Under the pieces are notes generated by a model. That model did no database searches, was not told the origin of the DNA, and was given only the letters and a program-made list of their open reading frames with translations. A DNA stretch of 64,000 nt, from IMG/VR virus record IMGVR_UViG_3300046170_000378, positions 148,343 to 212,342 of that record. One strand, written 5' to 3'. Of this stretch, positions 5,413-58,523 are shown piece after piece. Position 1 is the first letter of the stretch. Each line of letters begins with the position of its first letter. The position numbers were made by a program, and so were the translations under genes.

Positions 5413-5442
5413 TGAAACTTTAACGCCTTGTGTGTGTATAAT
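5413..5442 (+). promoter_or_regulatory. TGAAAC-N17/18-TATAA promoter-like motif (clamp loader)
   Basis: The same bipartite motif starts at 22628, 34508, 36611, 52232, 52652, 53651 and 58478. Confidence 0.65.
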
Positions 5443-6418: not shown

Positions 6419-6444
6419 AAAATAAGTTAGTATAAATTTTTTAT

Positions 6445-6468
6445 TGTCAAATATTTTTGGTATATTAG
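6445..6468 (+). promoter_or_regulatory. TGTCAA-N7-TGGTATATTAG early-promoter-like motif
   Basis: Nine copies of TGGTATATTAG, starting at 6458, 24289, 25678, 33542, 33844, 45588, 47072, 47656 and 48585. Confidence 0.75.
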
Positions 6469-22613: not shown

Positions 22614-22672
22614 TAAATAATTTATTTTGAAACCTTTTATACACGACGCGGTATAACTACTAAACAAAATAA

Positions 22673-22969
22673 ATGAGAACATCAACAACTTCACATTATA
22701 ATAGTTCTACTTTAACATCAGCTGAATATGATTTTAAAGAAAAGACATTAATTGTAAATTTTAACCATGCTAGTTACATGTATGAGGGTGTAGAGCCTGC
22801 AGACTTTAATGCCTTTGATCAAGCCGATTCTCAAGGTAAAGCACTAAACGAATTTATTAAAGGTAAATACGAGTATGATAAATTAGTTGATGAGAATATA
22901 GATACTAAATATCCAAAGGGTAGTCTATTAAATGAATTACCACCCGCGGATTATCAACTAGATAATTAA
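22673..22969 (+). CDS. KTSC domain protein
   Basis: SS.LTSAEYD..EKTLIVNF...Y.YEGV....F.AF..ADSQGK.LN..IKGKY. Confidence 0.8.
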   Translation: MRTSTTSHYNSSTLTSAEYDFKEKTLIVNFNHASYMYEGVEPADFNAFDQADSQGKALNEFIKGKYEYDKLVDENIDTKYPKGSLLNELPPADYQLDN

Positions 22970-24240: not shown

Positions 24241-24335
24241 TTTTTTTTGAAAATAGTTTAGCCCAGATTTTTTTATGTCAAAAGAATTTGGTATATTAGT
24301 AGAGTAATTAATAGTTAAACTAAAAAAAACAAATT

Positions 24336-25639: not shown

Positions 25640-25712
25640 AAATAATTAGTCCCAGATTTTTTTATGTCAATTATTTGTGGTATATTAGTATTGTATTTAA
25701 AAGCTAAAAGAT

Positions 25713-25943: not shown

Positions 25944-27238
25944 AAGACATGACAGATTTTCAACTTATTGCAGATTTCGTTGAAGCATCAAATGCTACGA
26001 ACTCTAATTCAGATAAACTAGAAGTTATCAAAGAATATACTCAGTATGATATTGTGTGTAAGGCACTTAATTATACTTACGACACATTTAAACAATATGG
26101 CGTAACTTCTGCTAATTGTAAGAAAAATTCAGATTTGGTAAGTCCTTACCACCAATTTGAAGACTTTTTCTTGTTGTTAGATTATCTAAACGATAGAACT
26201 CTTACGGGCCACGATGCAATTAAATCAGTTAACCGATATGTGTCAGATAATCCGCTTTATGCAGATCTTATTTGGAATATTATCGATCGTAACTTGAAGA
26301 CTAGATCTACTGCATCTATGATCAATAAAGTAAAACCTGGCCTAATTCCTACATTTGATGTGGCACTCGCTCAAGCATATGACGAGAAGACTAAGAAAAA
26401 GGTAGATTGGAATGATGGTTGGTATGCAAGTCGTAAACTTGATGGAGTTAGGTGTCTTGGTGTTATTGATGATAAAGGTAAAGTTAAATTTTACTCAAGA
26501 CAAGGTAAAGAGTTTTTGACTCTTGACAATCTTAAGCCATCGATTGAGAAGCTTGGCCTAACTAACATGGTTTTTGACGGAGAAGTTTGTGTAGTAGATG
26601 AAAATGGTAATGAAGATTTTCAAGGTATTATTAAAGAGATCAAACGAAAAGATCATACTATTGAAAAGCCATTCTATTATATCTTTGATTTATTGACTTC
26701 TAAAGATTTTGCAGATAAAGAATCTATCACTACACTTTCTGAAAGACTTGAAACTGCAAGAGCATATGTAATGAATGACGATTACATTGGAGTTTTAAAA
26801 CAAATTTTGGCAGATGACATGGTAATGGAAACTATGATGGAAAAGTCAAAGCGTGAAGGTTGGGAAGGTCTTATGTTGCGTAAAGATACAACTTACAAAG
26901 GTAAGCGTTCTAATGATGTTCTTAAAGTTAAGAAATTCTTTGATGATGAGTATGTAGTTGTCGATCTAGAAAACGATACACATCGTGTTATTGTCGATGG
27001 CACAGAGGTTGAAGAAGTAATGTTGAAGAATGTTATTATTGAACACAAAGGAAATCGCGTACAAGTCGGCAGTGGCTTTAATCATGAGCAGCGTAGATAC
27101 TATTTCCAAAATCCTAATCAGATTTTAGGAAAACAAATCACAGTTCAATACTTTGAAGAAACAACAAATATGAATGGAACTCACTCACTAAGATTTCCAG
27201 TAATTAAAGCGGTGTATGAAACACCAAGAGACATTTAA
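25928..27238 (+). CDS. lig: ATP-dependent DNA ligase
   Basis: SRKLDGVRC (motif I), FDGEV, YIFDLL, EGLMLRK, LKVKKF, VGSGF, LRFPV. Confidence 0.95.
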   Translation: MVKKIKDMTDFQLIADFVEASNATNSNSDKLEVIKEYTQYDIVCKALNYTYDTFKQYGVTSANCKKNSDLVSPYHQFEDFFLLLDYLNDRTLTGHDAIKSVNRYVSDNPLYADLIWNIIDRNLKTRSTASMINKVKPGLIPTFDVALAQAYDEKTKKKVDWNDGWYASRKLDGVRCLGVIDDKGKVKFYSRQGKEFLTLDNLKPSIEKLGLTNMVFDGEVCVVDENGNEDFQGIIKEIKRKDHTIEKPFYYIFDLLTSKDFADKESITTLSERLETARAYVMNDDYIGVLKQILADDMVMETMMEKSKREGWEGLMLRKDTTYKGKRSNDVLKVKKFFDDEYVVVDLENDTHRVIVDGTEVEEVMLKNVIIEHKGNRVQVGSGFNHEQRRYYFQNPNQILGKQITVQYFEETTNMNGTHSLRFPVIKAVYETPRDI

Positions 27239-27249
27239 ATATAAATAAT

Positions 27250-27474
27250 ATGAGATATACAGTAACTTACGAGGTTTACATTGAAGGCGACAATGACAAA
27301 CATGCCCTTTCTAAGGCAGAACTAATAGCCAAAAATCAAAACGCATTACATCCGAGTCAAAGATGGGATGTACATAAACTACATATCACTCCATTTGCAT
27401 CATTAAATGTAAAAGAAGTCGATATTGATGCTATTAGAACAGAAAAATTACTAAAAGAAGATTTACCATTTTAA
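27250..27474 (+). CDS. Hypothetical protein
   Basis: ORF track. Confidence 0.6.
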   Translation: MRYTVTYEVYIEGDNDKHALSKAELIAKNQNALHPSQRWDVHKLHITPFASLNVKEVDIDAIRTEKLLKEDLPF

Positions 27475-33484: not shown

Positions 33485-33576
33485 TTGTTCGTAACTTTTA
33501 GTAAAATAACCGTCATTTAATTTTTTTATGTCGGTTATTTGTGGTATATTAGTACTGTATTTAAAAGCTAAAAGAT

Positions 33577-33801
33577 ATGATTAGATCAAAACAACCAAAA
33601 TCAGAAATAATTATCGATTTAACAGGACCGCAAGGAAATGCATTTTATCTACTTGGAGTTGCAAAGGATTTTTGTAAGCAATTAGATATGACAAAGAAAA
33701 ATACACAATCAATTCTTGATGAAATGACCAGTGGTGATTACGAAAACTTAATTCAAGTTTTTGATCGTGAATTCGGATCAGTGGTAATTTTAGAAAGATA
33801 A
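33577..33801 (+). CDS. Early hypothetical protein
   Basis: IDLTGPQGNAFYLLG; follows early motif. Confidence 0.7.
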   Translation: MIRSKQPKSEIIIDLTGPQGNAFYLLGVAKDFCKQLDMTKKNTQSILDEMTSGDYENLIQVFDREFGSVVILER

Positions 33802-33882
33802 TTAAAAATAATTCAGCCCAGATTTTTTTATGTCAAAAAGATTTGGTATATTAGCCTAGTAATAATTAAAAAAAGAAAACAT

Positions 33883-34494
33883 ATGTCAAAATCAAAAGAG
33901 TTAAGCTACCGTCAGCTATCAGAGAATTTCATCAATTCTAAATCAGAAAAAGATTATAATGCGCTTTACGTTCGTGTGAAGCCAGGTTTGAAAAACTACA
34001 TTCATAATGTGGTCAAAGATAATGAAGCTACAGATGATATTTTGACAAATACTCTTACGAAGATGTGGACCAAGATAGATCAATATGATCCTAAATATCA
34101 AATCACTACATGGCTTTATCGTATTGCCTTTAATGAATGTCTTGGTTGGATTCGTCAACGTAATCGTAAATATAGCATCGATGCAATGAAAGAATATGGT
34201 ATTGAAATCTCAGAACACTATTCTCATACATCAGCTCATGATCTTCTTATTGAGATTGAGAGTAAAACCGAAGCAGATTTTATTGAAGAAGACGAAGCAC
34301 TTATGAATTCTTATGAATTGGCACTAAAAGCAATTCAAGATCTAAAGCCAATGTATCGAGATATTATCGAAGATCGTCTACTTAACAACATGAAATACGA
34401 AGATATTGCATCAAAGTATGGTGTGCCTCTTCAAACTGTTAAGAATCGTATCCGTAGGGGTAAGATTTTGATTCAAGAATCAATGACAAAATAA
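33883..34494 (+). CDS. ECF-type (sigma-70 family, group 4) RNA polymerase sigma factor
   Basis: Region 2 (DDILTNTLTKMW..IDQYD....TWLYRIAFNEC) and region 4 HTH (LKPMYRDII..MKYEDIA..VPLQTVKNRIRRGK); no regions 1 or 3. Confidence 0.9.
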   Translation: MSKSKELSYRQLSENFINSKSEKDYNALYVRVKPGLKNYIHNVVKDNEATDDILTNTLTKMWTKIDQYDPKYQITTWLYRIAFNECLGWIRQRNRKYSIDAMKEYGIEISEHYSHTSAHDLLIEIESKTEADFIEEDEALMNSYELALKAIQDLKPMYRDIIEDRLLNNMKYEDIASKYGVPLQTVKNRIRRGKILIQESMTK

Positions 34495-34598
34495 ATATCC
34501 CACCAATTGAAACCTTGCAAATAGCGCAAGTATAAAGATAGCAATCAGCAACGGCAGATTGAATGAAGAGCGAATTTGAAATGTAGATAGAAATCAAT

Positions 34599-34687
34599 GC
34601 CGGAATGGTGGAATTGGTAGACACGAGGGACTTAAAATCCCTTGGGCAGTAATGCCCGTGACGGTTCGAGCCCGTCTTCCGGTACCA
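34599..34687 (+). tRNA. trnL: tRNA-Leu(UAA)
   Basis: Cloverleaf with long variable arm; anticodon loop CTTAAAA; encoded CCA. Confidence 0.93.
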
Positions 34688-34748
34688 AGCAGGGAGTTAT
34701 ACAATACATGTTGGAACTATATAACTTTAAAATAGAACCCTGCGATAT

Positions 34749-34822
34749 GGACCAGTAGCTCAGCTGGATAGAGCATCTGCCTTCTAAGCAGACGGTCACA
34801 GGTTCGAATCCTGTCTGGTTCA
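34749..34822 (+). tRNA. trnR: tRNA-Arg(UCU)
   Basis: Anticodon arm TCTGC-CTTCTAA-GCAGA; no encoded CCA. Confidence 0.93.
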
Positions 34823-34830
34823 CTAAATAT

Positions 34831-34946
34831 GGGGAGTTAGTCAAATAGGTACGACGCTCCAGCTATAAGGCCGAAAACATCATACTAGTTACGAGGTGTG
34901 ATTAGGCTTGTTGGCAGAAGTAGGGGTTCGAATCCCCTACTCCCCC
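34831..34946 (+). ncRNA. tRNA-like RNA with ~45-nt insertion in the anticodon arm
   Basis: Acceptor GGGGAGT/ACTCCCC, D-arm GTC..GAC, T-arm AGGGG-TTCGAAT-CCCCT, long hairpin replacing the anticodon loop. Confidence 0.75.
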
Positions 34947-35047
34947 GCTCTTAGATAGGTTTAACAACCGAACAACGAGGCGTCAAATCTCACGCCTACA
35001 AGTCGAAAGACGGAGTCTAAGTGGAGTAATTTAAATATATAAACCTC

Positions 35048-35135
35048 GGAGAGGTGGCAGAGTGGTCGAATGCACTGGTCTTGAAAACCAGCGTACAGCA
35101 ATGTACCGGGGGTTCGAATCCCTCCCTCTCCGCCA
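35048..35135 (+). tRNA. trnS: tRNA-Ser(UGA)
   Basis: CTGGT-CTTGAAA-ACCAG, long variable arm, CCA. Confidence 0.93.
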
Positions 35136-35137
35136 TT

Positions 35138-35214
35138 GGTCTGGTAGTTCAGTTGGTTAGAATACTTGCCTGTCACGCAAGGGGTCGCGAGTTCGAGTCT
35201 CGTCCAGACCGCCA
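35138..35214 (+). tRNA. trnD: tRNA-Asp(GUC)
   Basis: TTGC-CTGTCAC-GCAA anticodon arm, CCA. Confidence 0.93.
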
Positions 35215-35232
35215 AAAAGAAAGAGAGAGAGT

Positions 35233-35658
35233 ATGAGGTTGTTGGTGGCACTTCTTTTTAGTACAATGATGTGGGCACAAGATTGTTCACCATATCATAA
35301 GGTTGATAAGTGGGAAGTAAATGATGATGTAGATTTTACTGCAGCTTGGGTTAGTTGTTTCCACGCATCTGGCTTAGCGTTTTCAATGGATTATAACAAC
35401 ATCTCTTTAGGAACTCATCTGATGGGCGAAGGCCATATGAATTCTGCATACGTGTTCTTGAGCTATCAATATCAACCACTCGATAGAATTAAATTATCTG
35501 CTGGACCTCTGTATAAATTAAATAACAATAGTGGCTTAATGGTTGCACAATATGGTGGAGATATTAAGTTATATAAATCTATCTGGCTCACGAGTAGAAT
35601 TTTGCAAATTAGAACAGATTTAAATTATCTTAACGTAGGACTTAAAATTGTGCTATAA
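35233..35658 (+). CDS. Hypothetical secreted/outer-membrane-like protein
   Basis: Signal-peptide-like N-terminus, beta-rich sequence. Confidence 0.6.
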   Translation: MRLLVALLFSTMMWAQDCSPYHKVDKWEVNDDVDFTAAWVSCFHASGLAFSMDYNNISLGTHLMGEGHMNSAYVFLSYQYQPLDRIKLSAGPLYKLNNNSGLMVAQYGGDIKLYKSIWLTSRILQIRTDLNYLNVGLKIVL

Positions 35659-35689
35659 TTGGATATATAAAATAAATATATGTCCTTAA

Positions 35690-36148
35690 ATGTCATTCAC
35701 AGAATTCAAAAATAAATTCGGTAACGTTATTTTTACAGTTACTGCTATTGGTGCATTGGTTACATTAATTGGTTACATTAGCCCAATTGTTGACTATGCG
35801 TCTGACCTTAATAAATTAGTTAATGAGTACGAGCAAATTCATAAATCTATGCAGAGAATAGAAACTCACATAGATCAATATGAAAGTGACAGAACTAATA
35901 AGAAGAAAACCTTCTCTATCGGACTTAGATCTGATACTGAAAATGGACAAATGATCTATGTAGATGAGAACAATGGAATCTATAGAGCGTTTCTAGACCC
36001 TAAAACTAAAGAATATTTTTATTATGATTCCGATGGACATCCGGTCTATTGTTATTCACAAAGAAAGGTTAATGGCGAAAAAGATCATATAGAAATTAAG
36101 CCTCTAGTTCTACCTGAAATTATTATCCTTACAGACTCTATCCAATAA
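35690..36148 (+). CDS. Late hypothetical membrane protein (TM + coiled coil)
   Basis: GATATATA at 35662; N-terminal hydrophobic helix. Confidence 0.65.
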   Translation: MSFTEFKNKFGNVIFTVTAIGALVTLIGYISPIVDYASDLNKLVNEYEQIHKSMQRIETHIDQYESDRTNKKKTFSIGLRSDTENGQMIYVDENNGIYRAFLDPKTKEYFYYDSDGHPVYCYSQRKVNGEKDHIEIKPLVLPEIIILTDSIQ

Positions 36149-36203
36149 ATCAAATGAAACAGTATTATACTGTATTGTATAAGTATTGGCTGTCAGTCAA
36201 GCT

Positions 36204-36328
36204 TTAGAGAGGTAGTGAAGCTGTAGTTAAGAAGTAGAGTGTATTAATTGTCGAAAAAGGGTTTATAGTAGACAGGCGTTACTCATTGCACTTAACCAGA
36301 AACCCCGAAAGACCCGAAGCCTCTCTAA
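36204..36328 (+). ncRNA. Candidate structured RNA with pseudoknot
   Basis: Closing stem TTAGAGAGG/CCTCTCTAA; crossing helices GTTAAG/CTTAAC and GGGTTT/AAACCC. Confidence 0.45.
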
Positions 36329-36331
36329 TTT

Positions 36332-36403
36332 GCTCCGTTCGTCTAACGGTTAGGACATTAGGTTTTCATCCTAAAAATAGGAGTTCGATTCTCCTACGGA
36401 GTA
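36332..36403 (+). tRNA. trnE: tRNA-Glu(UUC)
   Basis: TTAGG-TTTTCAT-CCTAA; no CCA. Confidence 0.9.
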
Positions 36404-36435
36404 CAATTATATAGCAAGTTTATATAAGTAAACAA

Positions 36436-36508
36436 TGTCCCTTGGTGTAATTGGCAACACGTCTGGTTTTGGTCCAGAAGAGTATAGGTTCGACCCCTGT
36501 AGGGACAA
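36436..36508 (+). tRNA. trnQ: tRNA-Gln(UUG)
   Basis: TCTGG-TTTTGGT-CCAGA; no CCA. Confidence 0.9.
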
Positions 36509-36516
36509 CAATTTTT

Positions 36517-36591
36517 CGGGGTGTAGCGTAGCCCGGTTATCGCGCCACGTTTGGGACGTGGAGGCCGCAGGTTCGAATCCTGCCACCCCGA
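36517..36591 (+). tRNA. trnP: tRNA-Pro(UGG)
   Basis: CCACG-TTTGGGA-CGTGG; no CCA. Confidence 0.92.
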
Positions 36592-36745
36592 CATTTTAAC
36601 ACCATTTCACTGAAACCTTTCAAATCAGCTTAATATAACTATCAAATCTAACAAACCTAGATTTTAAAAGTTATTTGACTTGCTAAACAAATAGATCATA
36701 GATCGAGTCTTGCACCTCTACATAGATTATAGGTGTTTTCAACAT

Positions 36746-36822
36746 GGGGATGTAGCTCAGTTGGTTAGAGCAGGACTCTTATATAGTCAAGGTCGTGGGT
36801 TCGAGCCCCGCCATCCCTACCA
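36746..36822 (+). tRNA. trnI: tRNA-Ile(UAU)
   Basis: GACT-CTTATAT-AGTC anticodon arm, canonical D and T arms, CCA. Confidence 0.85.
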
Positions 36823-36843
36823 AAGGCAACTATGATTTATTAA

Positions 36844-36916
36844 GATCTCTTAGCTCAGTTGGTAGAGCATCACACTTTTAATGTGAGGGTCCAGGGTTCG
36901 AGCCCCTGAGGGATCA
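36844..36916 (+). tRNA. trnK: tRNA-Lys(UUU)
   Basis: TCACA-CTTTTAA-TGTGA; no CCA. Confidence 0.92.
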
Positions 36917-36919
36917 CTT

Positions 36920-37001
36920 GCGGATGTGGTGAAATTGGTAGACACGCTAGTTTTAGGCACTAGTGCTTTATAGCTTGAAGGTTCGAGTCCTTTCATCCGC
37001 A
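36920..37001 (+). tRNA. trnL: tRNA-Leu(UAG)
   Basis: CTAGT-TTTAGGC-ACTAG, variable arm; no CCA. Confidence 0.9.
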
Positions 37002-37023
37002 CGTGTCATGCAAGCGCAAAAGA

Positions 37024-39577: not shown

Positions 39578-39946
39578 TTAGTACAGTATTTGTTTAGGAT
39601 ATTTTTCAAATAAGATATATCCGGATCTAATTCTAGCATCTACGTGAGGAGTAGCGTAGTCAACTATTTCTACTATTTTAGATAATTCCACATTGTCTTC
39701 ACCTTCTAATTTAGGATTATCAAAATAAGCATATCTGTTTTTATCAAAAACCTTTTGCATAATAATCCACTTGGAGATAAAGTAATCCATCTCATCTTTA
39801 AGCCTTTCTAAATGTAAAAGATGTGGAGAAACTTTCTTGCTAAGGTAAGATTTATCAACCGATTCCAAATAAGCATATAAAACATATTGCTTATGTTCAA
39901 AATCAACTGGAGCTTGAGAATACCAATCTAAATCTAATAGCTTCAT
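39578..39946 (-). CDS. Late hypothetical protein
   Basis: ORF track; minus-strand GATATATA at 39951-39958. Confidence 0.65.
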   Translation of the reverse strand: MKLLDLDWYSQAPVDFEHKQYVLYAYLESVDKSYLSKKVSPHLLHLERLKDEMDYFISKWIIMQKVFDKNRYAYFDNPKLEGEDNVELSKIVEIVDYATPHVDARIRSGYILFEKYPKQILY

Positions 39947-39958
39947 AATTTATATATC

Positions 39959-39985
39959 AAAAAAAAGAGGGCCGAAGCCCTCTTT
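39959..39985 (-). terminator. Terminator for the minus-strand operon
   Basis: AAAGAGGGC-CGAA-GCCCTCTTT hairpin; the A-run reads as a U-tract on the minus strand. Confidence 0.8.
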
Positions 39986-39986
39986 C

Positions 39987-40259
39987 TTATTGTCCATGTA
40001 CTTCACTTTTTACAATGAAGATATATTCACCAGGTCGTTCGGGATCTGGTTTGAAATCAATATCAATTATTTCATAATTAAATACTAATCTCATTGTCTC
40101 TCCTGGTTTTGCTCTCATAGTCCATGTTGTACCATAAGGATTTGCAAAATAATCTAGAATATCCACATCAGTATTAAAGTAGCGTGGAGATTTGATCTCT
40201 GAATAGTTAGCGCAACCAAATAGAGTTGCGAAGCATAAAAAAGTAAATAGTTTTTTCAT
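39987..40259 (-). CDS. Putative lipoprotein
   Basis: MKKLF...LFGC lipobox-like N-terminus. Confidence 0.6.
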   Translation of the reverse strand: MKKLFTFLCFATLFGCANYSEIKSPRYFNTDVDILDYFANPYGTTWTMRAKPGETMRLVFNYEIIDIDFKPDPERPGEYIFIVKSEVHGQ

Positions 40260-40273
40260 AATTAATTTTGTTT

Positions 40274-42073
40274 TTATCTAAATATGGTTATATGTCCGGA
40301 TCTTTGGTAAACTTCTGGAGAATTCCATTTACGTGCATAGAATGTATATGTGTAAACACCGTCTGAAACATAGCTCGGTCCATTATTAACACTTCCATTC
40401 CAATATGGATATGAATCAAAATCATCACCATATCCATGATAAATCTCACTACCCCATCTGTTAAAGACCCTAAACTCAACATCGACCCAGCAATTTAGAT
40501 CATAGATCATTTTCCATACATCGTTGATGCCATCGTTGTTAGGTGTAAATGTATTAGGTATAAAAACGGTCCATGGCCAGCATTCTTGCATACCGGGATC
40601 ATCAACACATGGCATACCGGTTTCGCAATCTACAGGAATGAACTCAGTTATAGTGTCTGTTAAATACACATACTCTACGACATCAATAAATGTGGTGTCA
40701 TATTGAGTTACATATAATGTATCAGTTATGAACACAGGAACCTCTACCTCAACAGTGTCTATCACATCAATATAAATAGTATCAGTTATGAACACAGGAA
40801 CCTCTACCTCAACGGTGTCTATTATGTTTACATAAACAGTATCGGTTATTGTTATCGTTTCATATTCACATGAACCATCGTCTTCTTCTGCATTTGGGTC
40901 AAAGTTAATTGCACATATATCTGTGCATCCTACTTCTGGCTCACACAGTGGAACAGGCGGTAAGTTCACAACAGTAGTGTTATTACCAGTAACTATTTCG
41001 TCATTAACAGTATTAACTTCTATTACAAATAATCCACCTTCAGACCAACCTTCTGGAAATACAAACTGTCCAGTATTAAATGTTTGACCTTCACCTGGCG
41101 GTATTTGTAAAATCATACTATCTCCACTATCATAACAAAACGTCGCGTCGGGATGCCAAAGTTCTACACAATATGTGTTCATATCAATGTCACCAGAATT
41201 AGTTATAGTAAATTGAACTTGATAATATGGATTTCCAGAGGCATCACAGCCGGTTATGAATTCAACATTTCCGGCTACTTGTGCATCTGTTGAGCCTTCA
41301 GGTGGATAGACACAGCTACCATCATCTTCAGTTGCATTTGGTTCATAATTTAATGCATCGGGATCGGTACAACCTGGAATAACAACAGTTTCGCAAATGA
41401 AATCTTCACCCTGGATCATTGCAGGTCCAGGATTGTCTTCTCTACAAACTGACCATGAATTATCACAATCCATATCTGGATATATTTGCACATTTGAAAG
41501 TGGCTGTTGTCCATCGTCATTAGCACCTAATTCAGCCCAACCTCCACCTGGGGCGTTAGGGCCATCATTTTGATACCATGAGTTTGAATAGTTTATTTGC
41601 CAAATAACAAACTCTACACATTCTCCTTGATCTAGCCAATAATCAATTACTGGAGCAGCACAGCAGCCTATTGCTGGAGAACCATCACAATTACCATTAC
41701 TTGGATTATCTAGCTCTACAACAAAGGTATCTCCAGTGTACAGTGGAAATTCTGAACTAGCATAATTTGATGGAAAATCAGAAGCTGATGGACCATACCA
41801 CCAACCAGGATGATTAGAAGTTGGTGCCATAAAACATGGACCATCGTCGTCTACATCGACAGCTTCATTTTGACCAGGAATATGAAAGCCAATCATTACC
41901 ATATTGACATGATCATTACTTCCATTATATCCAGTAGCTCCGCAGCCCTCGCCGTTAATGACTTCAACTGTAACTTCATAAGTATTTAAATTTACATCTG
42001 TAATTGCCAAATCACATTGACCTGAAATCACAAATACATGAAAAAACGTAAGTAAAAATAATAATCTTTTCAT
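40274..42073 (-). CDS. Secreted protein with T9SS type-B (gliding-motility-associated CHU_C) C-terminal domain
   Basis: Signal peptide; GCTDPDALNY..ATEDDGSC repeats; ITDT.Y repeats with a 60-bp duplication; IPNTFTPNNDGINDVW..VFNRWG..WNG..DGVYTY. Confidence 0.85.
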   Translation of the reverse strand: MKRLLFLLTFFHVFVISGQCDLAITDVNLNTYEVTVEVINGEGCGATGYNGSNDHVNMVMIGFHIPGQNEAVDVDDDGPCFMAPTSNHPGWWYGPSASDFPSNYASSEFPLYTGDTFVVELDNPSNGNCDGSPAIGCCAAPVIDYWLDQGECVEFVIWQINYSNSWYQNDGPNAPGGGWAELGANDDGQQPLSNVQIYPDMDCDNSWSVCREDNPGPAMIQGEDFICETVVIPGCTDPDALNYEPNATEDDGSCVYPPEGSTDAQVAGNVEFITGCDASGNPYYQVQFTITNSGDIDMNTYCVELWHPDATFCYDSGDSMILQIPPGEGQTFNTGQFVFPEGWSEGGLFVIEVNTVNDEIVTGNNTTVVNLPPVPLCEPEVGCTDICAINFDPNAEEDDGSCEYETITITDTVYVNIIDTVEVEVPVFITDTIYIDVIDTVEVEVPVFITDTLYVTQYDTTFIDVVEYVYLTDTITEFIPVDCETGMPCVDDPGMQECWPWTVFIPNTFTPNNDGINDVWKMIYDLNCWVDVEFRVFNRWGSEIYHGYGDDFDSYPYWNGSVNNGPSYVSDGVYTYTFYARKWNSPEVYQRSGHITIFR

Positions 42074-43345
42074 TATCTAATAAATATTTTTCTAGTAATA
42101 ACAATACCACCGATGTATTCTTCTACCTGAATATAAAATCCTGGAGTTAGATCACCATACTCAGAGTATGTTCTACCTAATATGTCCACCCATTTTACTT
42201 CAACTATGTCATCATCTAAGTTTCTCACTAAATTTTTAAGATTACCTGATTCAATCATACCCGCATCTCCAGTATCACATTCAGTACCATAATTGACTAA
42301 AAATAAAGTAAGATCATTAACATCTACGACTCCGTCATAGTTAAAATCTGCAGGCAAACATGCTCCGGTTTGGGTGTGCCACGTCAAATAATCTAAAAAG
42401 TCATTGATATTAATATATCCGTTTCCGTCTAAATCCCATGGACAATTACCTAAATCACATCCACTACATTCATTATTAATAGCTGCAGTTCTACCCAATT
42501 CTAATTGAGCGTGCATTCTATTAATTTGACCAGGAGTAAATAAATCTTGACAATTATCAGGCGCATATGACATATAAGATTCGTCGACCTCATCTATATC
42601 TGGACAAGCATCTTGACACGACCAATCAATTGCAGTTGGGGGCGTATCACAAACCCTATCACCTTCAAGTTCACAATCAACTTCGTTAAGAGCAGTAGGT
42701 ACAAGAATAGTTGTTACCGAATAAGTCTCTAGAAAAAGTGTGAGATAATCCACACCAGTGTCCAGCCTCATGTGTAAATGTTTTAGAATCAGAATCTACT
42801 ACTTCTGTAGCTCTAACCCAAACACCAACATTAGCAGGTGGAAGAGCAGTAAATCCTAAAATTCCACCACTCCATTCACCAATGTAGACTTCCATAATGT
42901 CACCGGTGTTTTCACCTATTTCATTTTGAACTTGATTATAACAATATATTGGGTTACTACACCACGAAGATAATTCCGATTCTTCATAAAACCTAACATC
43001 CTCCAAACAAAAAGAAATATCAGTGTTATTGATTTCAAATTGTTCATTTAGATAATCAAATTCATTTTGAATGTCTAATTCAGTAAAATCATACGTGCTT
43101 TGAATAACGTGTATAATTGTAGGAATTGTTTTAAGTGTATTTTGTTGTCTCGCTAACTTTTTTTCTACAGCGTCCTGTAGAGCAAAGAAGGATCTAGCGA
43201 ACTTCTCATCTTTGAGCTCTTCGCTAGTAGTTATAGCTTGCCCACATTTCTCAACGTGATGTAAGCTCTTTTGTGCAATGGCAGTATTAATAGTCAATAG
43301 ACATACCACGGCACTCATAAAAACAGATAGTTTTTTGAGTTGCAT
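42073..43345 (-). CDS. M43 (pappalysin-like) zinc metalloprotease with dockerin/EF-hand repeats and T9SS type-A-like tail, +1 indel at ~42699
   Basis: THEAGHWCGLSHTF, GDRVCDTPP, YMSY...FTPGQ..RM, DLDGNGYININD, C-terminal VDILGR..GFYI..TRKI. Confidence 0.8.
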
Positions 43346-45555: not shown

Positions 45556-45615
45556 TTGCTTCTAGATTTTTTTATGTCAATTATTTGTGGTATATTAGTA
45601 GTATAATTAAAAGCT

Positions 45616-47040: not shown

Positions 47041-47101
47041 TTCACCAGGATTTTTTTATGTCAATTATTTGTGGTATATTAGTACTATAATTAAAAACTA
47101 A

Positions 47102-47617: not shown

Positions 47618-47697
47618 AAATAAACAGCAAAAAGCTTTCCCCGTTAAAATAAAAGTGGTATATTAGTACTGTAATTAAAAAGCTAAAAATAAAAAAT

Positions 47698-48562: not shown

Positions 48563-48621
48563 ATTTTTTTATGTCAAAAAGATTTGGTATATTAGTAGAG
48601 TAATAATTAAAGAAAGAAAAC

Positions 48622-51165: not shown

Positions 51166-52234
51166 ACAAGAACAATTTTTACATGACTATTTGAATGCTT
51201 ATGCACCAGTAGCTCAAGAAACTGAAGGTCAACAAATATGGTCAGATTATATTAAACCATATTGTGATTTCTTAAAACAAGATGCATATGGAACTAGTTA
51301 TGGTATTTTAAAAGGAAGAACTGGATCTAGAAAGAATTCAAATCGTGTAATCATTGAAGCACACTGTGACGAGATTGCATGGATAATTACACATATCGAA
51401 AAAGATGGAATGATTAGAGTTAGACGCCATGGTGGGTCTGATAATATGATAGCACCATCAAAGTCTGTAATGATCCATACACATGATGGCAAAAAAGTTA
51501 GAGGAGTTTTTGGATGGCCAGCAATCCACACACGAACAAAAAGAGTCGAACAAGGATATGATCAACATGAATTGTGGGTAGATTGTGGACTTAAAGATTT
51601 TGATGCTGTAAATGCAGCTGGTGTTGAAGTTGGAAACCTAATCACATTTGACACACAATTAGAAGAGATTGGAGACTACTATGTCGGTAGATCGTTAGAT
51701 AATAAGATAGGTGGTTACATCATAGCAGAAGCTCTTAGAACTATTTGGGAAAAAGGTGTTGGTTTACCATATGATTTATATGTAGTAAACTCAGTTCAAG
51801 AAGAAGTTGGCCTTTATGGTGCTAAGAAAATAGCTAAAGAACTACAAGCAGATTTGGCACTCGTACACGATGTGTGCCATAATGTTAATACACCAAAAAT
51901 GGACCGAGCTAAGTATGGCCCAGTCGATGGTGGCAAAGGACCTTCATTAGAATACACATCTCAAAATCATAGAGGTATTTTAAATATGTTAAAGGACGTA
52001 GCTAAAGATGCAAAATTACCATTGCAACATCACGTTGGCAGTTATGGTAATGACACTGTTGCTTTCTTTTTAGAAAACACTCCAACTGCAATTCTAGCAA
52101 CACCTGTCAAATATATGCATACTACTGTAGAAATGGCACATAAAGAAGATGTAGAAAATTGCATTAAATTGTTTGTAGAATTCTTAGAGGCACTAACTCC
52201 AGAAAAAATAGATGAAATTAATAATAAGGGGTGA
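51158..52234 (+). CDS. M42 family aminopeptidase
   Basis: AHCDEI, LDNKIG, VQEEVG, HDV, YMHT. Confidence 0.9.
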   Translation: MNKQEQFLHDYLNAYAPVAQETEGQQIWSDYIKPYCDFLKQDAYGTSYGILKGRTGSRKNSNRVIIEAHCDEIAWIITHIEKDGMIRVRRHGGSDNMIAPSKSVMIHTHDGKKVRGVFGWPAIHTRTKRVEQGYDQHELWVDCGLKDFDAVNAAGVEVGNLITFDTQLEEIGDYYVGRSLDNKIGGYIIAEALRTIWEKGVGLPYDLYVVNSVQEEVGLYGAKKIAKELQADLALVHDVCHNVNTPKMDRAKYGPVDGGKGPSLEYTSQNHRGILNMLKDVAKDAKLPLQHHVGSYGNDTVAFFLENTPTAILATPVKYMHTTVEMAHKEDVENCIKLFVEFLEALTPEKIDEINNKG

Positions 52235-52283
52235 AACCTTTAAAAAATAACAAGTATAATACCCGAACAAAAATAAATTAAAC

Positions 52284-52643
52284 ATGTCTTATCAAATTAG
52301 AAAGGTAGAACGTTACACAAACTGGGAAGCTACACAAGCAGTAGATATTGATCCTAGTGATTTTACAGATCTTGCGACATTTCCCTACGAAGGCGATTCA
52401 GAACAAGATTTTGTTGAGTATATTCAAGATCTTTATTACGAAGATTGGTATGAAATTTGTGAAGAATTAGAAAGTTTAGATAGATTGACATCAGCAGACG
52501 CCTTGGCAACTATATTTGAAGGTGAAATGGAAATCTATTCCTCATCTGTAGAAAAAGAAGAGGTTTCGTGGATCGAAGTTGGGGAAATTGACGAATCATA
52601 TAGCAAGTATGGTGGTTTTAACGCAAGTGCTAGCACATTATAA
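52284..52643 (+). CDS. Acidic hypothetical protein
   Basis: ORF track; TGAAAC motif upstream. Confidence 0.65.
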   Translation: MSYQIRKVERYTNWEATQAVDIDPSDFTDLATFPYEGDSEQDFVEYIQDLYYEDWYEICEELESLDRLTSADALATIFEGEMEIYSSSVEKEEVSWIEVGEIDESYSKYGGFNASASTL

Positions 52644-52705
52644 TAAATTTTTGAAACAAAAAAGAGTAATCATATATAATTAGTATTAAACAAATAAATT
52701 AAACA

Positions 52706-52882
52706 ATGGAAGAATTATTAAACCAAATGAACGAGATTTTAGCTGACATCCAAGATGACGCAGTAAAATTTGAAGAAAAAGGAAATAAAGCAGCAGGTAC
52801 AAGAGTACGTAAAGCGATGCAAAACATCAAAGCTGTGGCACAAGAAGTAAGAGTTTACGTAAGCGCTAAAAACAACGCGTAA
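52706..52882 (+). CDS. Histone H1-like (Hc1 family) small DNA-binding protein, 58 aa
   Basis: Manually translated, missed by the track: KFEEKGNKAAGTRVRKAMQNIKAVAQEVR. Confidence 0.75.
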   Translation: MEELLNQMNEILADIQDDAVKFEEKGNKAAGTRVRKAMQNIKAVAQEVRVYVSAKNNA

Positions 52883-53003: not shown

Positions 53004-53029
53004 CTGAAGACACAGTTCTTTGAAATATT

Positions 53030-53430
53030 GGGAAGGCACATTTGATACTGATCATTGATGATGTGAGTGTATTGCCGAAAAAATCCTGACGGAAAGAGGG
53101 ATTAAGGCACACCAGACACCGAACACGTTTCGGCTTAGTTGCAGAAGTGAGTAACTAAGACTTGGCAAAGTAGATGGTGGTAGATCGAGAAAGATAACAT
53201 AAACTAATCTTTCTAGGAGCATTGCAAGTACCCGAGAGGAAATCTTGCCCAAGTGACCGAATATCCTGTCTTATTAGGGGATAAGGTACAATCAAAGCCG
53301 TTGCGGCGCTACAACGAGATTAACCATCTTGAGTAGAACTTGAAATAATAGTAAAGTTGATTGGTATGCAGTAATCATTACAATAAGTCGATCTTCTAGA
53401 GCTGGTATACTCTAGTACACGATCCTTCCT
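53030..53430 (+). ncRNA. Candidate ~400-nt highly structured noncoding RNA
   Basis: No + strand ORF of 60 aa or more; closing stem GGGAAGG/CCTTCCT; at least 7 internal helices; flanked by tRNAs. Confidence 0.6.
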
Positions 53431-53441
53431 TTTTTTATTAA

Positions 53442-53611: not shown

Positions 53612-53651
53612 AAACCGCCTATCCGATACAGGAAACAGCGGTTTTTTTTTT
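53612..53651 (+). terminator. Terminator after RNA operon
   Basis: AAACCGC...GCGGTTT followed by a long T-run. Confidence 0.7.
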
Positions 53652-53695
53652 GAAACAAACAACCCTTTGTAAATATAATATAAAAGATTTTAGAC

Positions 53696-53919: not shown

Positions 53920-54201
53920 ATGAATAAAGAAGATCTTAAAACAGGCAGAGTATTAGTTGATTTTTATGCTAATTGGTGTGGGCCATGCAGAATGCTAAGT
54001 AAACAATTAGATCAATATCAAGAAGAAATTACAGAAGTAAATGTAATTAAGGTTGATATTGAAGTGGAACATGAAATGGCACAAGCGTTCGGTGTTAGAT
54101 CTCTTCCAACACTAGTTTATATGGAAAATGGAGAAGTGATTGACAAGACAACTGGTATGATGCGAGTTAATGAATTAAAGCAATTTACTAAAACAGAATA
54201 A
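53920..54201 (+). CDS. trxA: Thioredoxin
   Basis: LVDFYANWCGPCR, VRSLPT. Confidence 0.93.
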   Translation: MNKEDLKTGRVLVDFYANWCGPCRMLSKQLDQYQEEITEVNVIKVDIEVEHEMAQAFGVRSLPTLVYMENGEVIDKTTGMMRVNELKQFTKTE

Positions 54202-57581: not shown

Positions 57582-58480
57582 AATTTGGGCAGACCGGTGA
57601 TTTAGTATCTATACTACAAGATGCGTTAGGTGTAAAACAGGATGGTGTTTTTGGGCATGTGACAAAACAAGCGGTTCGTTTATTTCAAATACAACACAAA
57701 TTACAAGCGGATTCAGTAGTTGGACACGTGACATGGCTTAAGTTGGGTATTAATCCACTAGAATTAGATGCAGATACTGACATTACTACTTCTGCAACAT
57801 GGATTGAGCAGTATAATTTACCAGAAGGAGAATACGTTAACGAGATAGATGCTAAGCGATATATTTTTATATCTGTAAATAATGGCCAACATTCGCCATA
57901 TGAAGTTATAGACAGATGGGCTTCTGATCAAAGAGGTAGAGTTGGGGCGCATTATGTTATAGGTGGATTAGCAACGCATTTAGATGTTGATAAATTATCA
58001 GGGTCAGATAGTACATATGACGGTAAAGTTTTGCAAGCAATCAAAGATGAAAACAGAGGGTTTCATTTAGGTCGTATTAAGTCACATAAATTAATTAAAC
58101 ACAGTATAAGTGTAGAGCTGTGTTCTGCAGGGTATTTGAAAGAACAAGGAGGTAAGTATTTTACGTGGTATAATCAAGAAGTACATCCTAGTCAAGTTGT
58201 TAGATTAGAAAAATCATATAGAGGTTATAGATATTTTCACAAATATTCACAGAATCAGTTGGAATCATTAGAAGCATTACTAAAACTATTATGTGAAAAA
58301 CATGAGATCTATAATTATTCCACAGATATTAATAAACTCAGAGTCTCTGGCGTTAATCATTTTGATGATGCTATTGAATCTGACTTGAAAGTTTCTTCAA
58401 GAGACGTTCTAAGAAGCGATACTATAAGTATATCTCCACAAAGTGGATTATTAGATGTTCTTAGTAGATTTACCAGATGA
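57560..58480 (+). CDS. Endolysin paralog (PG-binding + amidase_2-like) lacking Zn ligands
   Basis: Colinear with 44056 gene: DGVFGHVT, LPEGEY, RGRVGAHYVIGG, SVELCSAGYL, RYFHKYS..Q.E.L. Confidence 0.75.
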   Translation: MQSKYIVKFGQTGDLVSILQDALGVKQDGVFGHVTKQAVRLFQIQHKLQADSVVGHVTWLKLGINPLELDADTDITTSATWIEQYNLPEGEYVNEIDAKRYIFISVNNGQHSPYEVIDRWASDQRGRVGAHYVIGGLATHLDVDKLSGSDSTYDGKVLQAIKDENRGFHLGRIKSHKLIKHSISVELCSAGYLKEQGGKYFTWYNQEVHPSQVVRLEKSYRGYRYFHKYSQNQLESLEALLKLLCEKHEIYNYSTDINKLRVSGVNHFDDAIESDLKVSSRDVLRSDTISISPQSGLLDVLSRFTR

Positions 58481-58523
58481 AACTTATAATAGATTTTTTA
58501 TATAACTTTTAAATAATTATAAC

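What the first reader, a model, noticed from the sequence alone, without database searches (positions are those of the whole stretch)
33831..36639. Phage ECF sigma factor with a matching TGAAAC-N17-TATAA promoter class: a candidate middle-gene switch
Seen: TGAAAC followed 17-18 nt later by TATA(A/T) starts at 5413, 22628, 34508, 36611, 52232, 52652, 53651 and 58478. Every copy lies at a gene boundary, upstream of the clamp loader, KTSC gene, two tRNA sub-arrays, the Hc1 gene/RNA operon and the thioredoxin operon. The ECF sigma gene (33883-34494) itself sits behind the early motif. Known: TGAAAC is the -35 element of B. subtilis SigW-type ECF sigmas, while T4 uses MotA/AsiA rather than a sigma for middle genes. 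Inference: an early > ECF-sigma > late cascade with an unusual hybrid promoter (ECF-like -35, sigma70-like -10).
Basis: partly seen in the sequence, partly recalled or inferred. Interest (0 to 1): 0.8.

Follow-up and report, generated by a model that had tools for sequence, protein, structure and literature searches.

The report
Phage ECF sigma and its promoters
An uncultured marine jumbo phage, probably of Flavobacteriia, encodes its own ECF-type sigma factor and a strict, widely conserved promoter class (TGAAAC-N17-TATAA) before its replication, repair and tRNA genes; this is most likely a phage-made middle-gene switch, a known strategy seen here in a new phage family.

Summary
TGAAAC-N17/18-TATAA occurs 10 times in the window, all on the + strand, against 0.63 expected. 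Nine of the ten touch intergenic DNA.

In 60 related phage loci the exact motif occurs 161 times on the gene strand and never on the other. The spacer is 17 bp in 103 unique sites and 18 bp in 22. Only the two boxes survive divergence. A pyrimidine-purine step 5-6 nt after TATAA marks the likely start site.

33883-34494 is a true two-domain ECF sigma by Pfam, NCBIfam, fold search and best PDB match (B. subtilis SigW). It always sits behind a host-type promoter and is not autoregulated.

Its -35-reading residues match those with which SigW reads GAAAC. The -10 reads better as SigW-like (R)TA than as sigma70-like.

A third class, GATATATA with no -35, precedes capsid and tail genes.

The sigma-to-promoter link and the timing remain inferred, because no RNA data could be laid. 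Phage-encoded sigmas for middle genes are known (SPO1 gp28, phiEco32 gp36), so this is a new member of a known kind.

The parts
33883..34494 (+). ECF-type (group 4) sigma factor gene, 203 aa. The sigma2 domain spans about residues 28-95 and sigma4 about 147-194, joined by an acidic, variable linker.
   Evidence: Pfam PF04542, PF08281 and PF04545. TIGR02937 scores 72.1 bits against a cutoff of 42.9, and the best subfamily is Sig70_bacteroi1. The best PDB profile hit is SigW 5wuq at E 1.4e-12. The AF2 model has pLDDT 83.6, and the top 14 Foldseek hits are ECF sigmas. Orthologues of 53-100% identity occur in 60 viral loci.
33823..33854 (+). Class 1 (host-type, presumed early) promoter of the sigma gene. 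It has a T-run, ATGTC, 10 nt, then GG-TATATTAG. TATATTAG is one mismatch from the flavobacterial sigmaA -7 box TAnnTTTG.
   Evidence: Sequence. Ten GTATATTAG copies occur in the window, all on + (one, at 19474, lies inside the 1133-aa ORF; the rest precede gene starts). A TATATT box lies upstream of the sigma gene in 49 of 50 unique relatives, and a class 2-like site in only 1 of 50. The sigmaA -7 box consensus is from PMC9723704.
33521..33552 (+). Class 1 promoter of the 74-aa gene 33577-33801 (PHROG 1933, unknown function) just upstream of the sigma gene.
5413..5441 (+). Class 2 promoter (spacer 18) before the clamp-loader gene, whose ATG is at 5459. The gene is broken by frame shifts in this assembly.
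22628..22656 (+). Class 2 promoter (spacer 18) before the KTSC-domain gene 22673-22969.
27217..27244 (+). The ATG lies 5 nt after TATAA, so the transcript would be leaderless.
34508..34535 (+). Class 2 promoter (spacer 17), 14 nt after the sigma stop codon. It drives the tRNA sub-array 34599-35214 (Leu, Arg, an odd 116-nt tRNA, Ser, Asp).
   Evidence: A class 2 site directly after the sigma gene occurs in 17 of 50 relatives.
36155..36182 (+).
36611..36638 (+). Class 2 promoter (spacer 17), 107 nt before the tRNA sub-array 36746-37002 (Ile, Lys, Leu).
52232..52259 (+). Class 2 promoter (spacer 17) before the 119-aa ORF 52284-52643 (no family found).
52652..52679 (+). Class 2 promoter (spacer 17) before the Hc1 histone-like gene 52706-52882, followed by tRNA-Ala and tRNA-Gly.
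53651..53678 (+). Class 2 promoter (spacer 17) before the 73-aa ORF, thioredoxin 53920-54201 and exonuclease 54693-55457.
58478..58505 (+). Class 2 promoter (spacer 17) before the 78-aa ORF and the glycosyltransferase genes 59352-62526.
35662..35669 (+). An example of class 3 (GATATATA, -10-only, presumed late) inside the finding's range. Other copies precede the major head protein (1284), tail sheath (13590), tail tube (16515) and more. It is not part of the ECF promoter class.
   Evidence: A set of 232 unique copies shows no conserved -35.

Best explanation
The window is the last 64 kb of a 212-kb seawater phage contig. The phage has a T4-superfamily capsid, and its host is probably a marine flavobacterium.

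The sequence supports three promoter classes:
- Class 1 resembles the host sigmaA promoter (-7 box TATATTAG or TATATTTA). It drives small early genes, a ligase and exonuclease, and the phage's own ECF sigma gene.
- Class 2 is TGAAAC(-33..-28)-N17(18)-R-TATAA(-11..-6)-N4-Y-R(+1). The proposal is that the newly made ECF sigma binds host core RNA polymerase and reads this class.
- Class 3 is GATATATA with no -35. It drives structural genes through a different factor, not yet found and probably gp55-like.

How class 2 would be read:
- Sigma4 reads G-35, A-34 and C-31 through R192, N188 and K187. These are the positions SigW uses on its own TGAAAC.
- Sigma2 reads R-T-A with a flipped A, as in SigW's CGTA.

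Class 2 switches on clamp loader, DNA repair, thioredoxin, exonuclease, histone-like, glycosyltransferase and tRNA genes.

Shown: the motif, its geometry, its conservation, the sigma's family and the promoter type in front of it.

Inferred: that this sigma reads class 2, the start site, and the temporal order.
For: 1. Motif statistics. The window has 10 copies on + and 0 on -, against 0.63 expected. The 60 sigma-bearing loci have 161 on + and 0 on -, in 59 of 60 loci. Loci chosen by a class 1 17-mer rather than by the sigma have 61 on the same strand and 12 on the other.

2. Sigma-type geometry. The spacer is 17 bp in 103 unique sites, 18 bp in 22, 16 bp in 2 and 19 bp in 1. Tolerated variants keep AAAC: AGAAAC 32:1 and TTAAAC 19:1.

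3. Footprint. Upstream of orthologues of gene 27477 only TGAAAC and TATAA are kept, while the spacer and flanks diverge.

4. Extra signals not used in the search. R (A or G) precedes TATAA in 90% of sites, with T at 1%. Y occurs at 84% and R at 98% at positions +5 and +6 after TATAA.

5. Position. 56% of 127 unique sites have a gene start within 30 nt, against 4% of random positions. 25% lie fully inside ORFs, against 86% of random 28-mers.

6. The sigma is a two-domain ECF. Its DNA-reading segments are invariant across 53-100% identical orthologues: NTLTK.WTK.DQ..P.YQITTWLY.I.FN in region 2 and LQT(I/V)KNRI.RGK in region 4.2. The linker varies. This matches the invariant motif.

7. In the SigW sigma4/-35 structure, R175, T171 and K170 read G-35, A-34 and G'-31 of GAAAC (PMC6713349). 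The aligned phage residues are R192, N188 and K187.

8. Cellular ECFs with the same K-N helix (PLQTVKNRIFKAR) carry AAAAC in their upstream autoregulatory-type motif.

9. A basic residue at the RpoE K56 position goes with T at -11 (PMC7776599), and the phage has invariant K60. L3-loop swaps show that ECFs read one flipped -10 base and that SigW-type loops redirect specificity (PMC8103513; PDB 5or5 with GTAAAA).

10. The sigma gene has a host-type promoter in 49 of 50 relatives and a class 2-like site in 1 of 50, so it must be made before its targets.

11. Class 2 does not fit the flavobacterial sigmaA -7 box TAnnTTTG or the CGT box of flavobacterial ECFs. A host factor is therefore less likely.

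12. Late structural genes carry another motif with no -35.
Against: - No experiment or RNA data links the sigma to the motif or fixes the timing. The single read-laying run was rejected.
- The usual computational link for ECFs, autoregulation, is absent.
- The -10 lacks the CGT typical of ECF promoters.
- The dominant spacing is 1 bp shorter than in SigW promoters.
- The published specificity code associates Arg at the RpoE F175 position with T at -32. Most phage orthologues have Arg there, yet the motif has A. This weighs less because orthologues with His or Leu at that position (L055-57, L039, L058) keep TGAAAC.
- Only 64 of 212 kb of this genome were visible, so another DNA-binding factor could exist.
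- The co-occurrence of sigma and motif is partly built in by how the loci were chosen.
- The one sigma-less relative examined, PTm1, also lacks classes 1 and 3, so it is a weak control.
Confidence: 0.65

Rival explanations
1. Class 2 promoters are read by host sigmaA holoenzyme helped by a phage activator that binds TGAAAC near -30. This would be sigma appropriation as with T4 MotA/AsiA. The ECF sigma would have other targets.
For: The phage has a T4-superfamily capsid, and T4 middle promoters pair a -30 box with a -10 element (PMC2988021 listed; discussion). Most of the genome was not visible.
Against: - The class 2 -10 (R-TATAA) does not match the flavobacterial sigmaA -7 box TAnnTTTG, which class 1 does match.
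- No hit annotated as MotA or AsiA was returned among the window's proteins by PHROGs.
- TGAAAC is exactly the -35 expected from the sigma's own recognition helix.
- The strict 17/18 spacing and near-consensus stringency are typical of ECF promoters.
Confidence: 0.12
2. A host ECF sigma reads class 2, so the phage borrows a host stress regulon signal. The phage sigma would be a captured copy that reinforces it, or would be unrelated.
For: The -35 has the generic ECF AAC core. Flavobacteria carry several ECF sigmas with overlapping regulons.
Against: - The flavobacterial ECF motif mapped so far has a CGT -10.
- No close cellular homologue of the phage sigma was found. Outside two MAG contigs that look like binned phage DNA (70% and 60% identity), the best cellular hits are at most 27% identical.
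- The motif is invariant across phages whose sigma has diverged to 53% identity and whose hosts presumably differ.
- Depending on a host stress sigma held by an anti-sigma would be a fragile strategy (inference).
Confidence: 0.08
3. The phage ECF sigma is the late factor and reads class 3 (GATATATA). Class 2 would be read by some other phage protein.
For: - No gp55-like protein was found in the sequence available.
- Class 3 often ends in ...TATAA, overlapping the class 2 -10 letters.
- phiEco32 gp36 serves both middle and late promoters mainly through a -10-region motif.
Against: - Class 3 has no conserved -35 in 232 unique copies, whereas the sigma keeps an intact, invariant sigma4 recognition helix.
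- ECF sigmas need both elements.
- T4-group jumbo phages are reported to carry a minimal gp55-type sigma and gp33 (PMC7824862). These may lie in the unseen 148 kb.
Confidence: 0.1

Closest known systems
Bacillus subtilis SigW (ECF01) and its promoters, TGAAAC-N16-CGTA
   Same: - SigW is the best-scoring solved structure by sequence profile (5wuq).
- The -35 hexamer TGAAAC is identical.
- The residues that read G-35, A-34 and C-31 are R, T and K in SigW and R, N and K in the phage.
- The -10 core is purine-T-A.
- The promoters are strict and near-consensus.
   Different: - It is not a SigW orthologue. The NCBIfam SigW models score 57-66 bits against cutoffs of 209-243.
- The C and G of CGTA are not required; the position before T is A or G.
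- The -10 is extended by TAA.
- The dominant spacing is 1 bp shorter.
- There is no anti-sigma neighbour and no autoregulation.
- It is phage-encoded, and the host is Bacteroidota rather than Bacillota.
Escherichia phage phiEco32 gp36 (with gp79)
   Same: A phage-encoded two-domain sigma (sigma2-like NTD, sigma4-like CTD) replaces the host sigma on host core polymerase after the early phase and reads a phage-specific consensus.
   Different: - gp36 is a distant sigma homologue with a motif (AATGTA at -11.5) dominated by the -10 region, and it serves both middle and late genes.
- It needs the co-factor gp79, which also displaces sigma70.
- Here the sigma is a canonical ECF with a strong -35, and late genes carry another motif.
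- No gp79-like partner was looked for.
Bacillus phage SPO1 gp28 (middle) and gp33/gp34 (late) sigma cascade
   Same: The order is host sigmaA for early genes, then a phage sigma for middle genes, then another phage factor for late genes (abstract of PMC13401047).
   Different: The sigma families, the host phylum and the promoter sequences all differ. The cascade here is inferred from sequence only.
T4 middle (MotA/AsiA) and late (gp55/gp33/gp45) transcription
   Same: - The phage has a T4-superfamily capsid and tail.
- There are three promoter classes.
- The middle class pairs a -30/-35 box with a -10 element and precedes replication and tRNA genes.
- The late class is -10-only and A/T-rich, like T4 TATAAATA (own knowledge).
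   Different: No MotA or AsiA was found in the window. The middle -10 is not the host type. A full sigma, rather than an activator with a remodelled host sigma, is the likely reader.

Membership tests
ECF (group 4) sigma-70 family sigma factors | A sigma2 domain (regions 2.1-2.4) is present. | tested here: met
   Pfam Sigma70_r2 at E 1.1e-10, covering residues 28-95. The domain superposes on sigmaE region 2 / -10 DNA structures (4lup TM 0.83, rmsd 2.0).
ECF (group 4) sigma-70 family sigma factors | A sigma4 domain with an HTH recognition helix is present. | tested here: met
   Pfam Sigma70_r4_2 at E 2.4e-9 and r4 at E 2.2e-6, covering residues 147-194. The helix LQT(I/V)KNRI.RGK aligns to SigW and RpoE recognition helices.
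ECF (group 4) sigma-70 family sigma factors | Regions 1.1 and 3 are absent. The protein is about 200 aa with two helical domains joined by a linker. | tested here: met
   The protein is 203 aa with no other Pfam domain. The AF2 model shows two helical bundles, and residues 100-125 have low confidence. The top 14 Foldseek hits are ECF sigmas.
ECF (group 4) sigma-70 family sigma factors | The curated family model passes its cutoff. | tested here: met
   TIGR02937 sigma70-ECF scores 72.1 bits against a cutoff of 42.9. No subfamily or equivalog model reaches its own cutoff.
ECF (group 4) sigma-70 family sigma factors | The cognate promoter is bipartite, with an AAC-containing -35 and a fixed spacer. 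| tested here: inconclusive
   Such a motif exists and is conserved. Its assignment to this sigma is inferred, not shown.
ECF (group 4) sigma-70 family sigma factors | Typical but not defining: autoregulation and a co-transcribed anti-sigma factor. | tested here: not met
   A class 2-like site lies upstream of the sigma gene in 1 of 50 relatives. The gene is followed by a promoter and tRNAs, or by unrelated ORFs.
ECF (group 4) sigma-70 family sigma factors | It binds core RNA polymerase and directs initiation. | not testable with these tools
   This needs in vitro transcription or a reporter assay.
SigW orthologues (ECF01) | The equivalog-level sequence model passes. | tested here: not met
   NF007223 scores 65.8 bits against 209, and TIGR02948 scores 57.1 against 243.
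SigW-type promoters | The -35 is TGAAAC. | tested here: met
SigW-type promoters | The -10 is CGTA at N16. | tested here: not met
   The -10 is R-TATAA. There is no C and G is optional (38%). The T-A core lies 1 bp closer to the -35 in 103 of 128 unique sites.
T4 MotA/AsiA sigma appropriation | MotA and AsiA homologues are present, and the middle promoter keeps the host sigma's -10 element. | tested here: not met
   No such PHROG or Pfam hit was found among the window's proteins, but only the window was tested. The class 2 -10 differs from the host-type -7 box.
Phage-encoded sigma for post-early genes (SPO1 gp28, phiEco32 gp36 kind) | The phage sigma gene is expressed from a host-type promoter, and a distinct phage-specific consensus precedes a later gene set. 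| tested here: met
   Class 1 lies before the sigma gene in 49 of 50 relatives. Class 2 lies before replication, repair and tRNA genes. Timing itself was not measured.

The most novel reading that the evidence does not exclude
A large, abundant family of marine T4-superfamily jumbo phages of Bacteroidota may run a three-factor cascade. The steps would be host sigmaA, then a phage ECF sigma with no anti-sigma, then a gp55-like late factor. In this cascade a canonical ECF sigma would fill the middle-gene role that MotA/AsiA fills in T4. The sigma family has more than 1100 protein clusters at 90% identity, on contigs up to 271 kb. Its promoter would be a SigW-like TGAAAC-N17-RTATAA, invariant over about 50% protein divergence. 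That would give a ready-made orthogonal sigma/promoter pair for a phylum whose primary sigma and promoters are atypical.
Probability: 0.5. Interest if true: 0.6.

Novelty: new member of a known kind. Interest (0 to 1): 0.5.

Why it matters
If the link holds, it gives the first sequence-level model of the transcription programme of an abundant but uncultured group of marine jumbo phages that probably infect Flavobacteriia. The model has three promoter classes, and one of them is read by the phage's own ECF sigma.

It would allow genes in hundreds of related metagenomic contigs to be assigned to temporal classes from sequence alone.

It would also show that T4-superfamily phages outside the Proteobacteria handle the middle-gene switch with a complete alternative sigma rather than by sigma appropriation.

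Finally, it would offer a compact orthogonal sigma/promoter pair for Bacteroidota genetics.

The concept of a phage-encoded sigma cascade is long established, so the surprise for a specialist is moderate.

Tried and rejected
1. RNA evidence. Metatranscriptome runs holding about 10-23% of the sampled words exist.

2. Autoregulatory promoters of close cellular homologues. The genome scan found no close cellular relatives. It returned two probable phage contigs binned into Flavobacteriaceae and Saprospiraceae MAGs, plus ECFs at most 27% identical, mostly Riflebacteria. These were useful only because they share the K-N recognition helix and carry an AAAAC -35.

3. Sigma-less relative as a negative control. 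Tenacibaculum phage PTm1 (complete, 224,680 bp) has no sigma homologue and only 1 exact motif. It also lacks classes 1 and 3, so it is too diverged to discriminate.

4. The nearest GenBank relative with a sigma homologue, LR756500.1 (30% identity, 22% GC). In 40 kb around the gene there is no clear enrichment (2:1), so the result is uninformative.

5. Search for a second sigma or a gp55-like late factor. PHROGs on all window ORFs of 60 aa or more found none. T4 gp55 by phmmer, and the phage-sigma HMM, against 6199 ORFs from about 2 Mb of related loci found none beyond the orthologues. Most of each genome was not sampled.

6. Hairpins in the promoter spacers. Some sites, including the one after the sigma gene, have 5-6 bp palindromes. 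The class as a whole is not enriched (9.9% against 8.2% in shuffles).

7. ESM Atlas look-ups of two unknown class 2-driven proteins gave only unnamed viral clusters.

8. Reading class 1's ATGTC as the ECF -35, which would fit Arg-175 with T at -32. This was rejected because the -10 would then fall 12 nt downstream, not 16-18. TATATTAG fits the host -7 box, and the upstream half of class 1 is replaceable (subclass with CTTTCCCGTT).

Full report
**What the window is**

The sigma gene matches, at 100% identity, a locus on IMG/VR contig IMGVR_UViG_3300046170_000378 (212,342 bp). The coordinates place the window at contig positions 148,343-212,342, the last 64 kb. DNA runs that hold it are seawater metagenomes. 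GC content is about 34%, and nearly all genes are on the + strand.

The major head protein is gp23-like. It is 50% identical to an uncultured 462-kb phage and 35% identical to Tenacibaculum phage PTm1, and it also matches the Prevotella Lak phages. Tail sheath, tail tube and terminase genes are present. There is no nucleotide-level relative in GenBank phages apart from tRNA matches.

Several hints point to a Bacteroidota host, probably marine Flavobacteriia:
- the best NCBIfam subfamily for the sigma is Sig70_bacteroi1
- there are tRNA matches to Cellulophaga and Bacteroides phages
- a 70%-identical sigma lies on a contig binned into a Flavobacteriaceae MAG
- class 1 promoters resemble the flavobacterial sigmaA -7 box (see below)

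**The observation**

TGAAAC-N17/18-TATAA has 10 exact copies, all on the + strand, against 0.63 expected from shuffles with a maximum of 4. Relaxing any one letter adds almost nothing. Nine of the ten touch intergenic sequence, against 15% of random 28-mers (P about 3e-7). The tenth lies in the last codons of the ligase gene, 5 nt before the next ATG.

The downstream features are:
- clamp loader, real ATG at 5459
- KTSC-domain gene
- a 74-aa ORF plus an Fpg/Nei-like glycosylase
- three tRNA sub-arrays
- a 119-aa ORF
- Hc1, followed by tRNA-Ala and tRNA-Gly
- a 73-aa ORF, thioredoxin and an exonuclease
- a 78-aa ORF and glycosyltransferases

**Conservation**

A scan of IMG/VR with the sigma protein returned 60 loci whose orthologues are 53-100% identical. 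The exact motif occurs in 59 of them. It is found 161 times on the sigma strand and never on the other strand, over 946 kb.

Among unique sites the spacer is 17 bp in 103, 18 bp in 22, 16 bp in 2 and 19 bp in 1. Tolerated one-letter variants keep AAAC and TATAA: AGAAAC 32:1 and TTAAAC 19:1, plus to minus.

Upstream of orthologues of gene 27477 only the two boxes and their distance are kept, while the spacer and flanks diverge freely. The ATG follows TATAA by about 17 nt.

A logo of the 106 spacer-17 sites shows two signals that were not part of the search pattern:
- a purine (A 52%, G 38%, T 1%) directly before TATAA
- a pyrimidine (84%) then a purine (98%) at 5 and 6 nt after TATAA, the usual signature of a start site

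Of 127 unique sites, 56% have a same-strand gene start within 30 nt, against 4% of random positions. Only 25% lie fully inside an ORF, against 86% of random 28-mers.

In a second sample of 120 loci chosen by a class 1 17-mer rather than by the sigma, the exact motif is 61 on the same strand and 12 on the other.

This is a promoter class. With the conserved purine taken as +1, the model is TGAAAC at -33 to -28 and R-TATAA at -11 to -6.

**Three promoter classes**

The intergenic regions show two other recurrent motifs.

Class 1 has a T-run, ATGTC, 10 nt and then GG-TATATTAG. A variant replaces the upstream half with CTTTCCCGTT. Class 1 occurs ten times on +. It precedes an exonuclease, the ligase operon, several small unknown ORFs and the sigma gene itself. 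TATATTAG, or TATATTTA in relatives, is one mismatch from the flavobacterial sigmaA -7 box TAnnTTTG at -12 to -5 (PMC9723704).

Class 3 is GATATATA(A/G), 25-48 nt before start codons. It precedes the major head protein, tail sheath, tail tube and a neck-like protein, among others. Two copies lie before the minus-strand genes. In 232 unique copies it has no conserved -35, like T4 late promoters (own knowledge).

Gene content therefore suggests this order: class 1 early, class 2 pre-replicative or middle, class 3 late. One orthologue of the 27250 gene sits behind class 1 in a relative, L010. That fits classes 1 and 2 serving neighbouring phases.

**The sigma**

The 203-aa product has Pfam Sigma70_r2 and r4_2/r4 and nothing else. 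It passes TIGR02937 (sigma70-ECF) but no equivalog model.

A profile of 35 orthologues hits B. subtilis SigW best among solved structures (5wuq, E 1.4e-12). AlgU and RpoE follow.

The AF2 model (pLDDT 83.6) is two helical bundles with a poorly defined linker. The top 14 Foldseek hits are ECF sigmas, and most of the 28 hits at E <= 0.001 are too. Its sigma2 domain superposes on sigmaE region 2 bound to -10 DNA at rmsd 2.0.

The family is large. More than 1100 clusters at 90% identity have E<1e-5, on contigs up to 271 kb, and are auto-annotated as ECF-subfamily sigma. Across orthologues the linker and termini vary. Region 2 (NTLTK.WTK.DQ..P.YQITTWLY.I.FN) and the 4.2 helix (LQT(I/V)KNRI.RGK) are invariant or nearly so.

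In 49 of 50 unique relatives a TATATT box lies within 90 nt upstream of the gene. Only 1 of 50 has a class 2-like site within 300 nt. In 17 of 50 a class 2 site follows the stop codon directly. The sigma is thus made from a host-type promoter, is not autoregulated, and has no anti-sigma neighbour.

**Linking sigma and motif (inference)**

The crystal structure of SigW sigma4 on its -35 (T-36 G-35 A-34 A-33 A-32 C-31) shows three base-specific contacts. R175 reads G-35, T171 reads A-34 and K170 reads the G paired with C-31. The two central A's act through DNA shape (PMC6713349). In the alignment these positions are R192, N188 and K187 in the phage protein, all invariant. They predict GAAAC, which is the motif.

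Cellular ECFs that share the K-N helix (PLQTVKNRIFKAR, mostly Riflebacteria) carry AAAACTTTTT, then about 10-12 nt, then CGGTAT immediately upstream of their genes. This is the position where ECFs are usually autoregulated.

On the -10 side, ECF sigmas read one flipped base in a pocket formed by loop L3. RpoE needs C. Swapping in the SigW loop redirects specificity to SigW's target (PMC8103513). A chimeric sigmaE/SigW region 2 was solved with GTAAAA (5or5). SigW's -10 is CGTA, sigmaE's is GTCAAA, and the phage motif is R-T-A-T-A-A. A basic residue at the RpoE K56 position goes with T at -11 (PMC7776599), and the phage has invariant K60. The RpoE N84 position, which sets -13/-12 specificity, is Gly in the phage. 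That fits the loose purine there.

The -10 is therefore better described as an ECF/SigW-like RTA core with an A/T extension than as a sigma70-like hexamer.

**Points against**

- The same specificity code associates Arg at the RpoE F175 position with T at -32. Most orthologues have Arg there, yet the motif has A. Orthologues with His (as in SigW) or Leu at that position still have TGAAAC sites.
- The dominant spacing puts T-A 1 bp closer to the -35 than in SigW promoters.
- There is no CGT.
- Nothing experimental ties the protein to the DNA.

**What could not be settled**

No gp55-like factor or second sigma was found in the window. None was found in about 2 Mb of related loci either. Those loci sample only parts of the genomes. 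A comparative study reports that this group of jumbo phages carries minimal gp55-type sigmas and gp33 (PMC7824862).

PTm1 lacks both the sigma and the motif. It also lacks the other two classes, so it is a weak control.

**Comparison and verdict**

A phage-encoded sigma that takes over host core polymerase after the early phase is a known strategy. Examples are SPO1 gp28 with gp33/34 and phiEco32 gp36 with gp79. T4 uses MotA/AsiA for middle genes and gp55 for late genes.

This case is a new member of that kind. It has a canonical ECF sigma with a SigW-like promoter, in an abundant uncultured marine jumbo-phage family of the T4 superfamily.

I rate the promoter class as established by sequence evidence. 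The assignment to the ECF sigma is likely, at about 0.65. The temporal cascade is plausible but untested.

Noticed in passing
window 1284, 2928, 9011, 11047, 13590, 16515, 18654, 35662, 37067, 43540, 55449 (+); 39958, 43422 (-): A third promoter-like class, GATATATA(A/G), lies 25-48 nt before start codons of the major head, sheath, tube and other genes. It has no conserved -35 in 232 unique copies across relatives. It looks like a T4-late-type promoter whose factor was not found.
   Followed up: partly
window 6439-6468, 24271-24299, 25660-25688, 33521-33552, 33823-33854, 45570-45598, 47054-47082, 47640-47666, 48567-48595: Class 1 promoters are conserved over about 32 nt, far more than a -7 box needs. 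They come in two interchangeable upstream versions, T-run + ATGTCAA or CTTTCCCGTT. The extra conserved half may be a -33/UP-like element or an operator.
   Followed up: partly
window 34831-34946: Rfam finds a 13th tRNA (42.5 bits) that ARAGORN missed. It has about 44 extra nucleotides in the anticodon-arm region, so it may contain an intron or be otherwise unusual. Its identity was not determined.
   Followed up: partly
window 5459-6418 and 13630-15660: The clamp-loader and tail-sheath genes are broken into several frames, by frame shifts rather than single stops. These are probably indel errors of the assembly, but genuine interruption was not excluded.
   Followed up: no
window 3947-4163: There are about 14 tandem copies of a 15-nt unit (GACGACACCAAGACT and variants) directly after the 326-aa ORF 2966-3946. 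If read in frame they would encode a D/T/K-rich peptide repeat.
   Followed up: no
window 34514-34530; L002 and L013 at about 10627-10645: The spacer of the class 2 promoter just after the sigma gene is a 5-6 bp palindrome whose arms change in a compensatory way between relatives (CTTGC/GCAAG, CTTACA/TGTAAG, TAGATA/TATCTA). It could be a terminator for the sigma transcript or an operator. Spacers of the class as a whole are not enriched in palindromes.
   Followed up: partly
window 27240-27252: At the 27217 promoter the ATG of the next gene starts 6 nt after TATAA, exactly at the predicted start site. That transcript would be leaderless.
   Followed up: no
window 36183-36331 and 53005-53441: Stretches of 149 and 437 nt with no convincing ORF lie behind class 2 promoters or between tRNAs. 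They have no Rfam match at gathering score and might hold unannotated small RNAs.
   Followed up: no
L065-L103 (cellular genome contigs), about 10-45 nt upstream of the ECF genes: A clade of ECF sigmas, mostly from Riflebacteria/Ozemobacteraceae MAGs, with helix PLQTVKNRIFKAR has a conserved upstream motif: AAAACTTTTT, about 10-12 nt, then CGGTAT. This is presumably their autoregulatory promoter.
   Followed up: partly
window 39578-43345 (- strand): This is the only minus-strand gene block in the window (four or five ORFs, one of 599 aa, with no family hit). GC skew is reversed and GATATATA copies lie on the minus strand. No class 2 site is on that strand.
   Followed up: no
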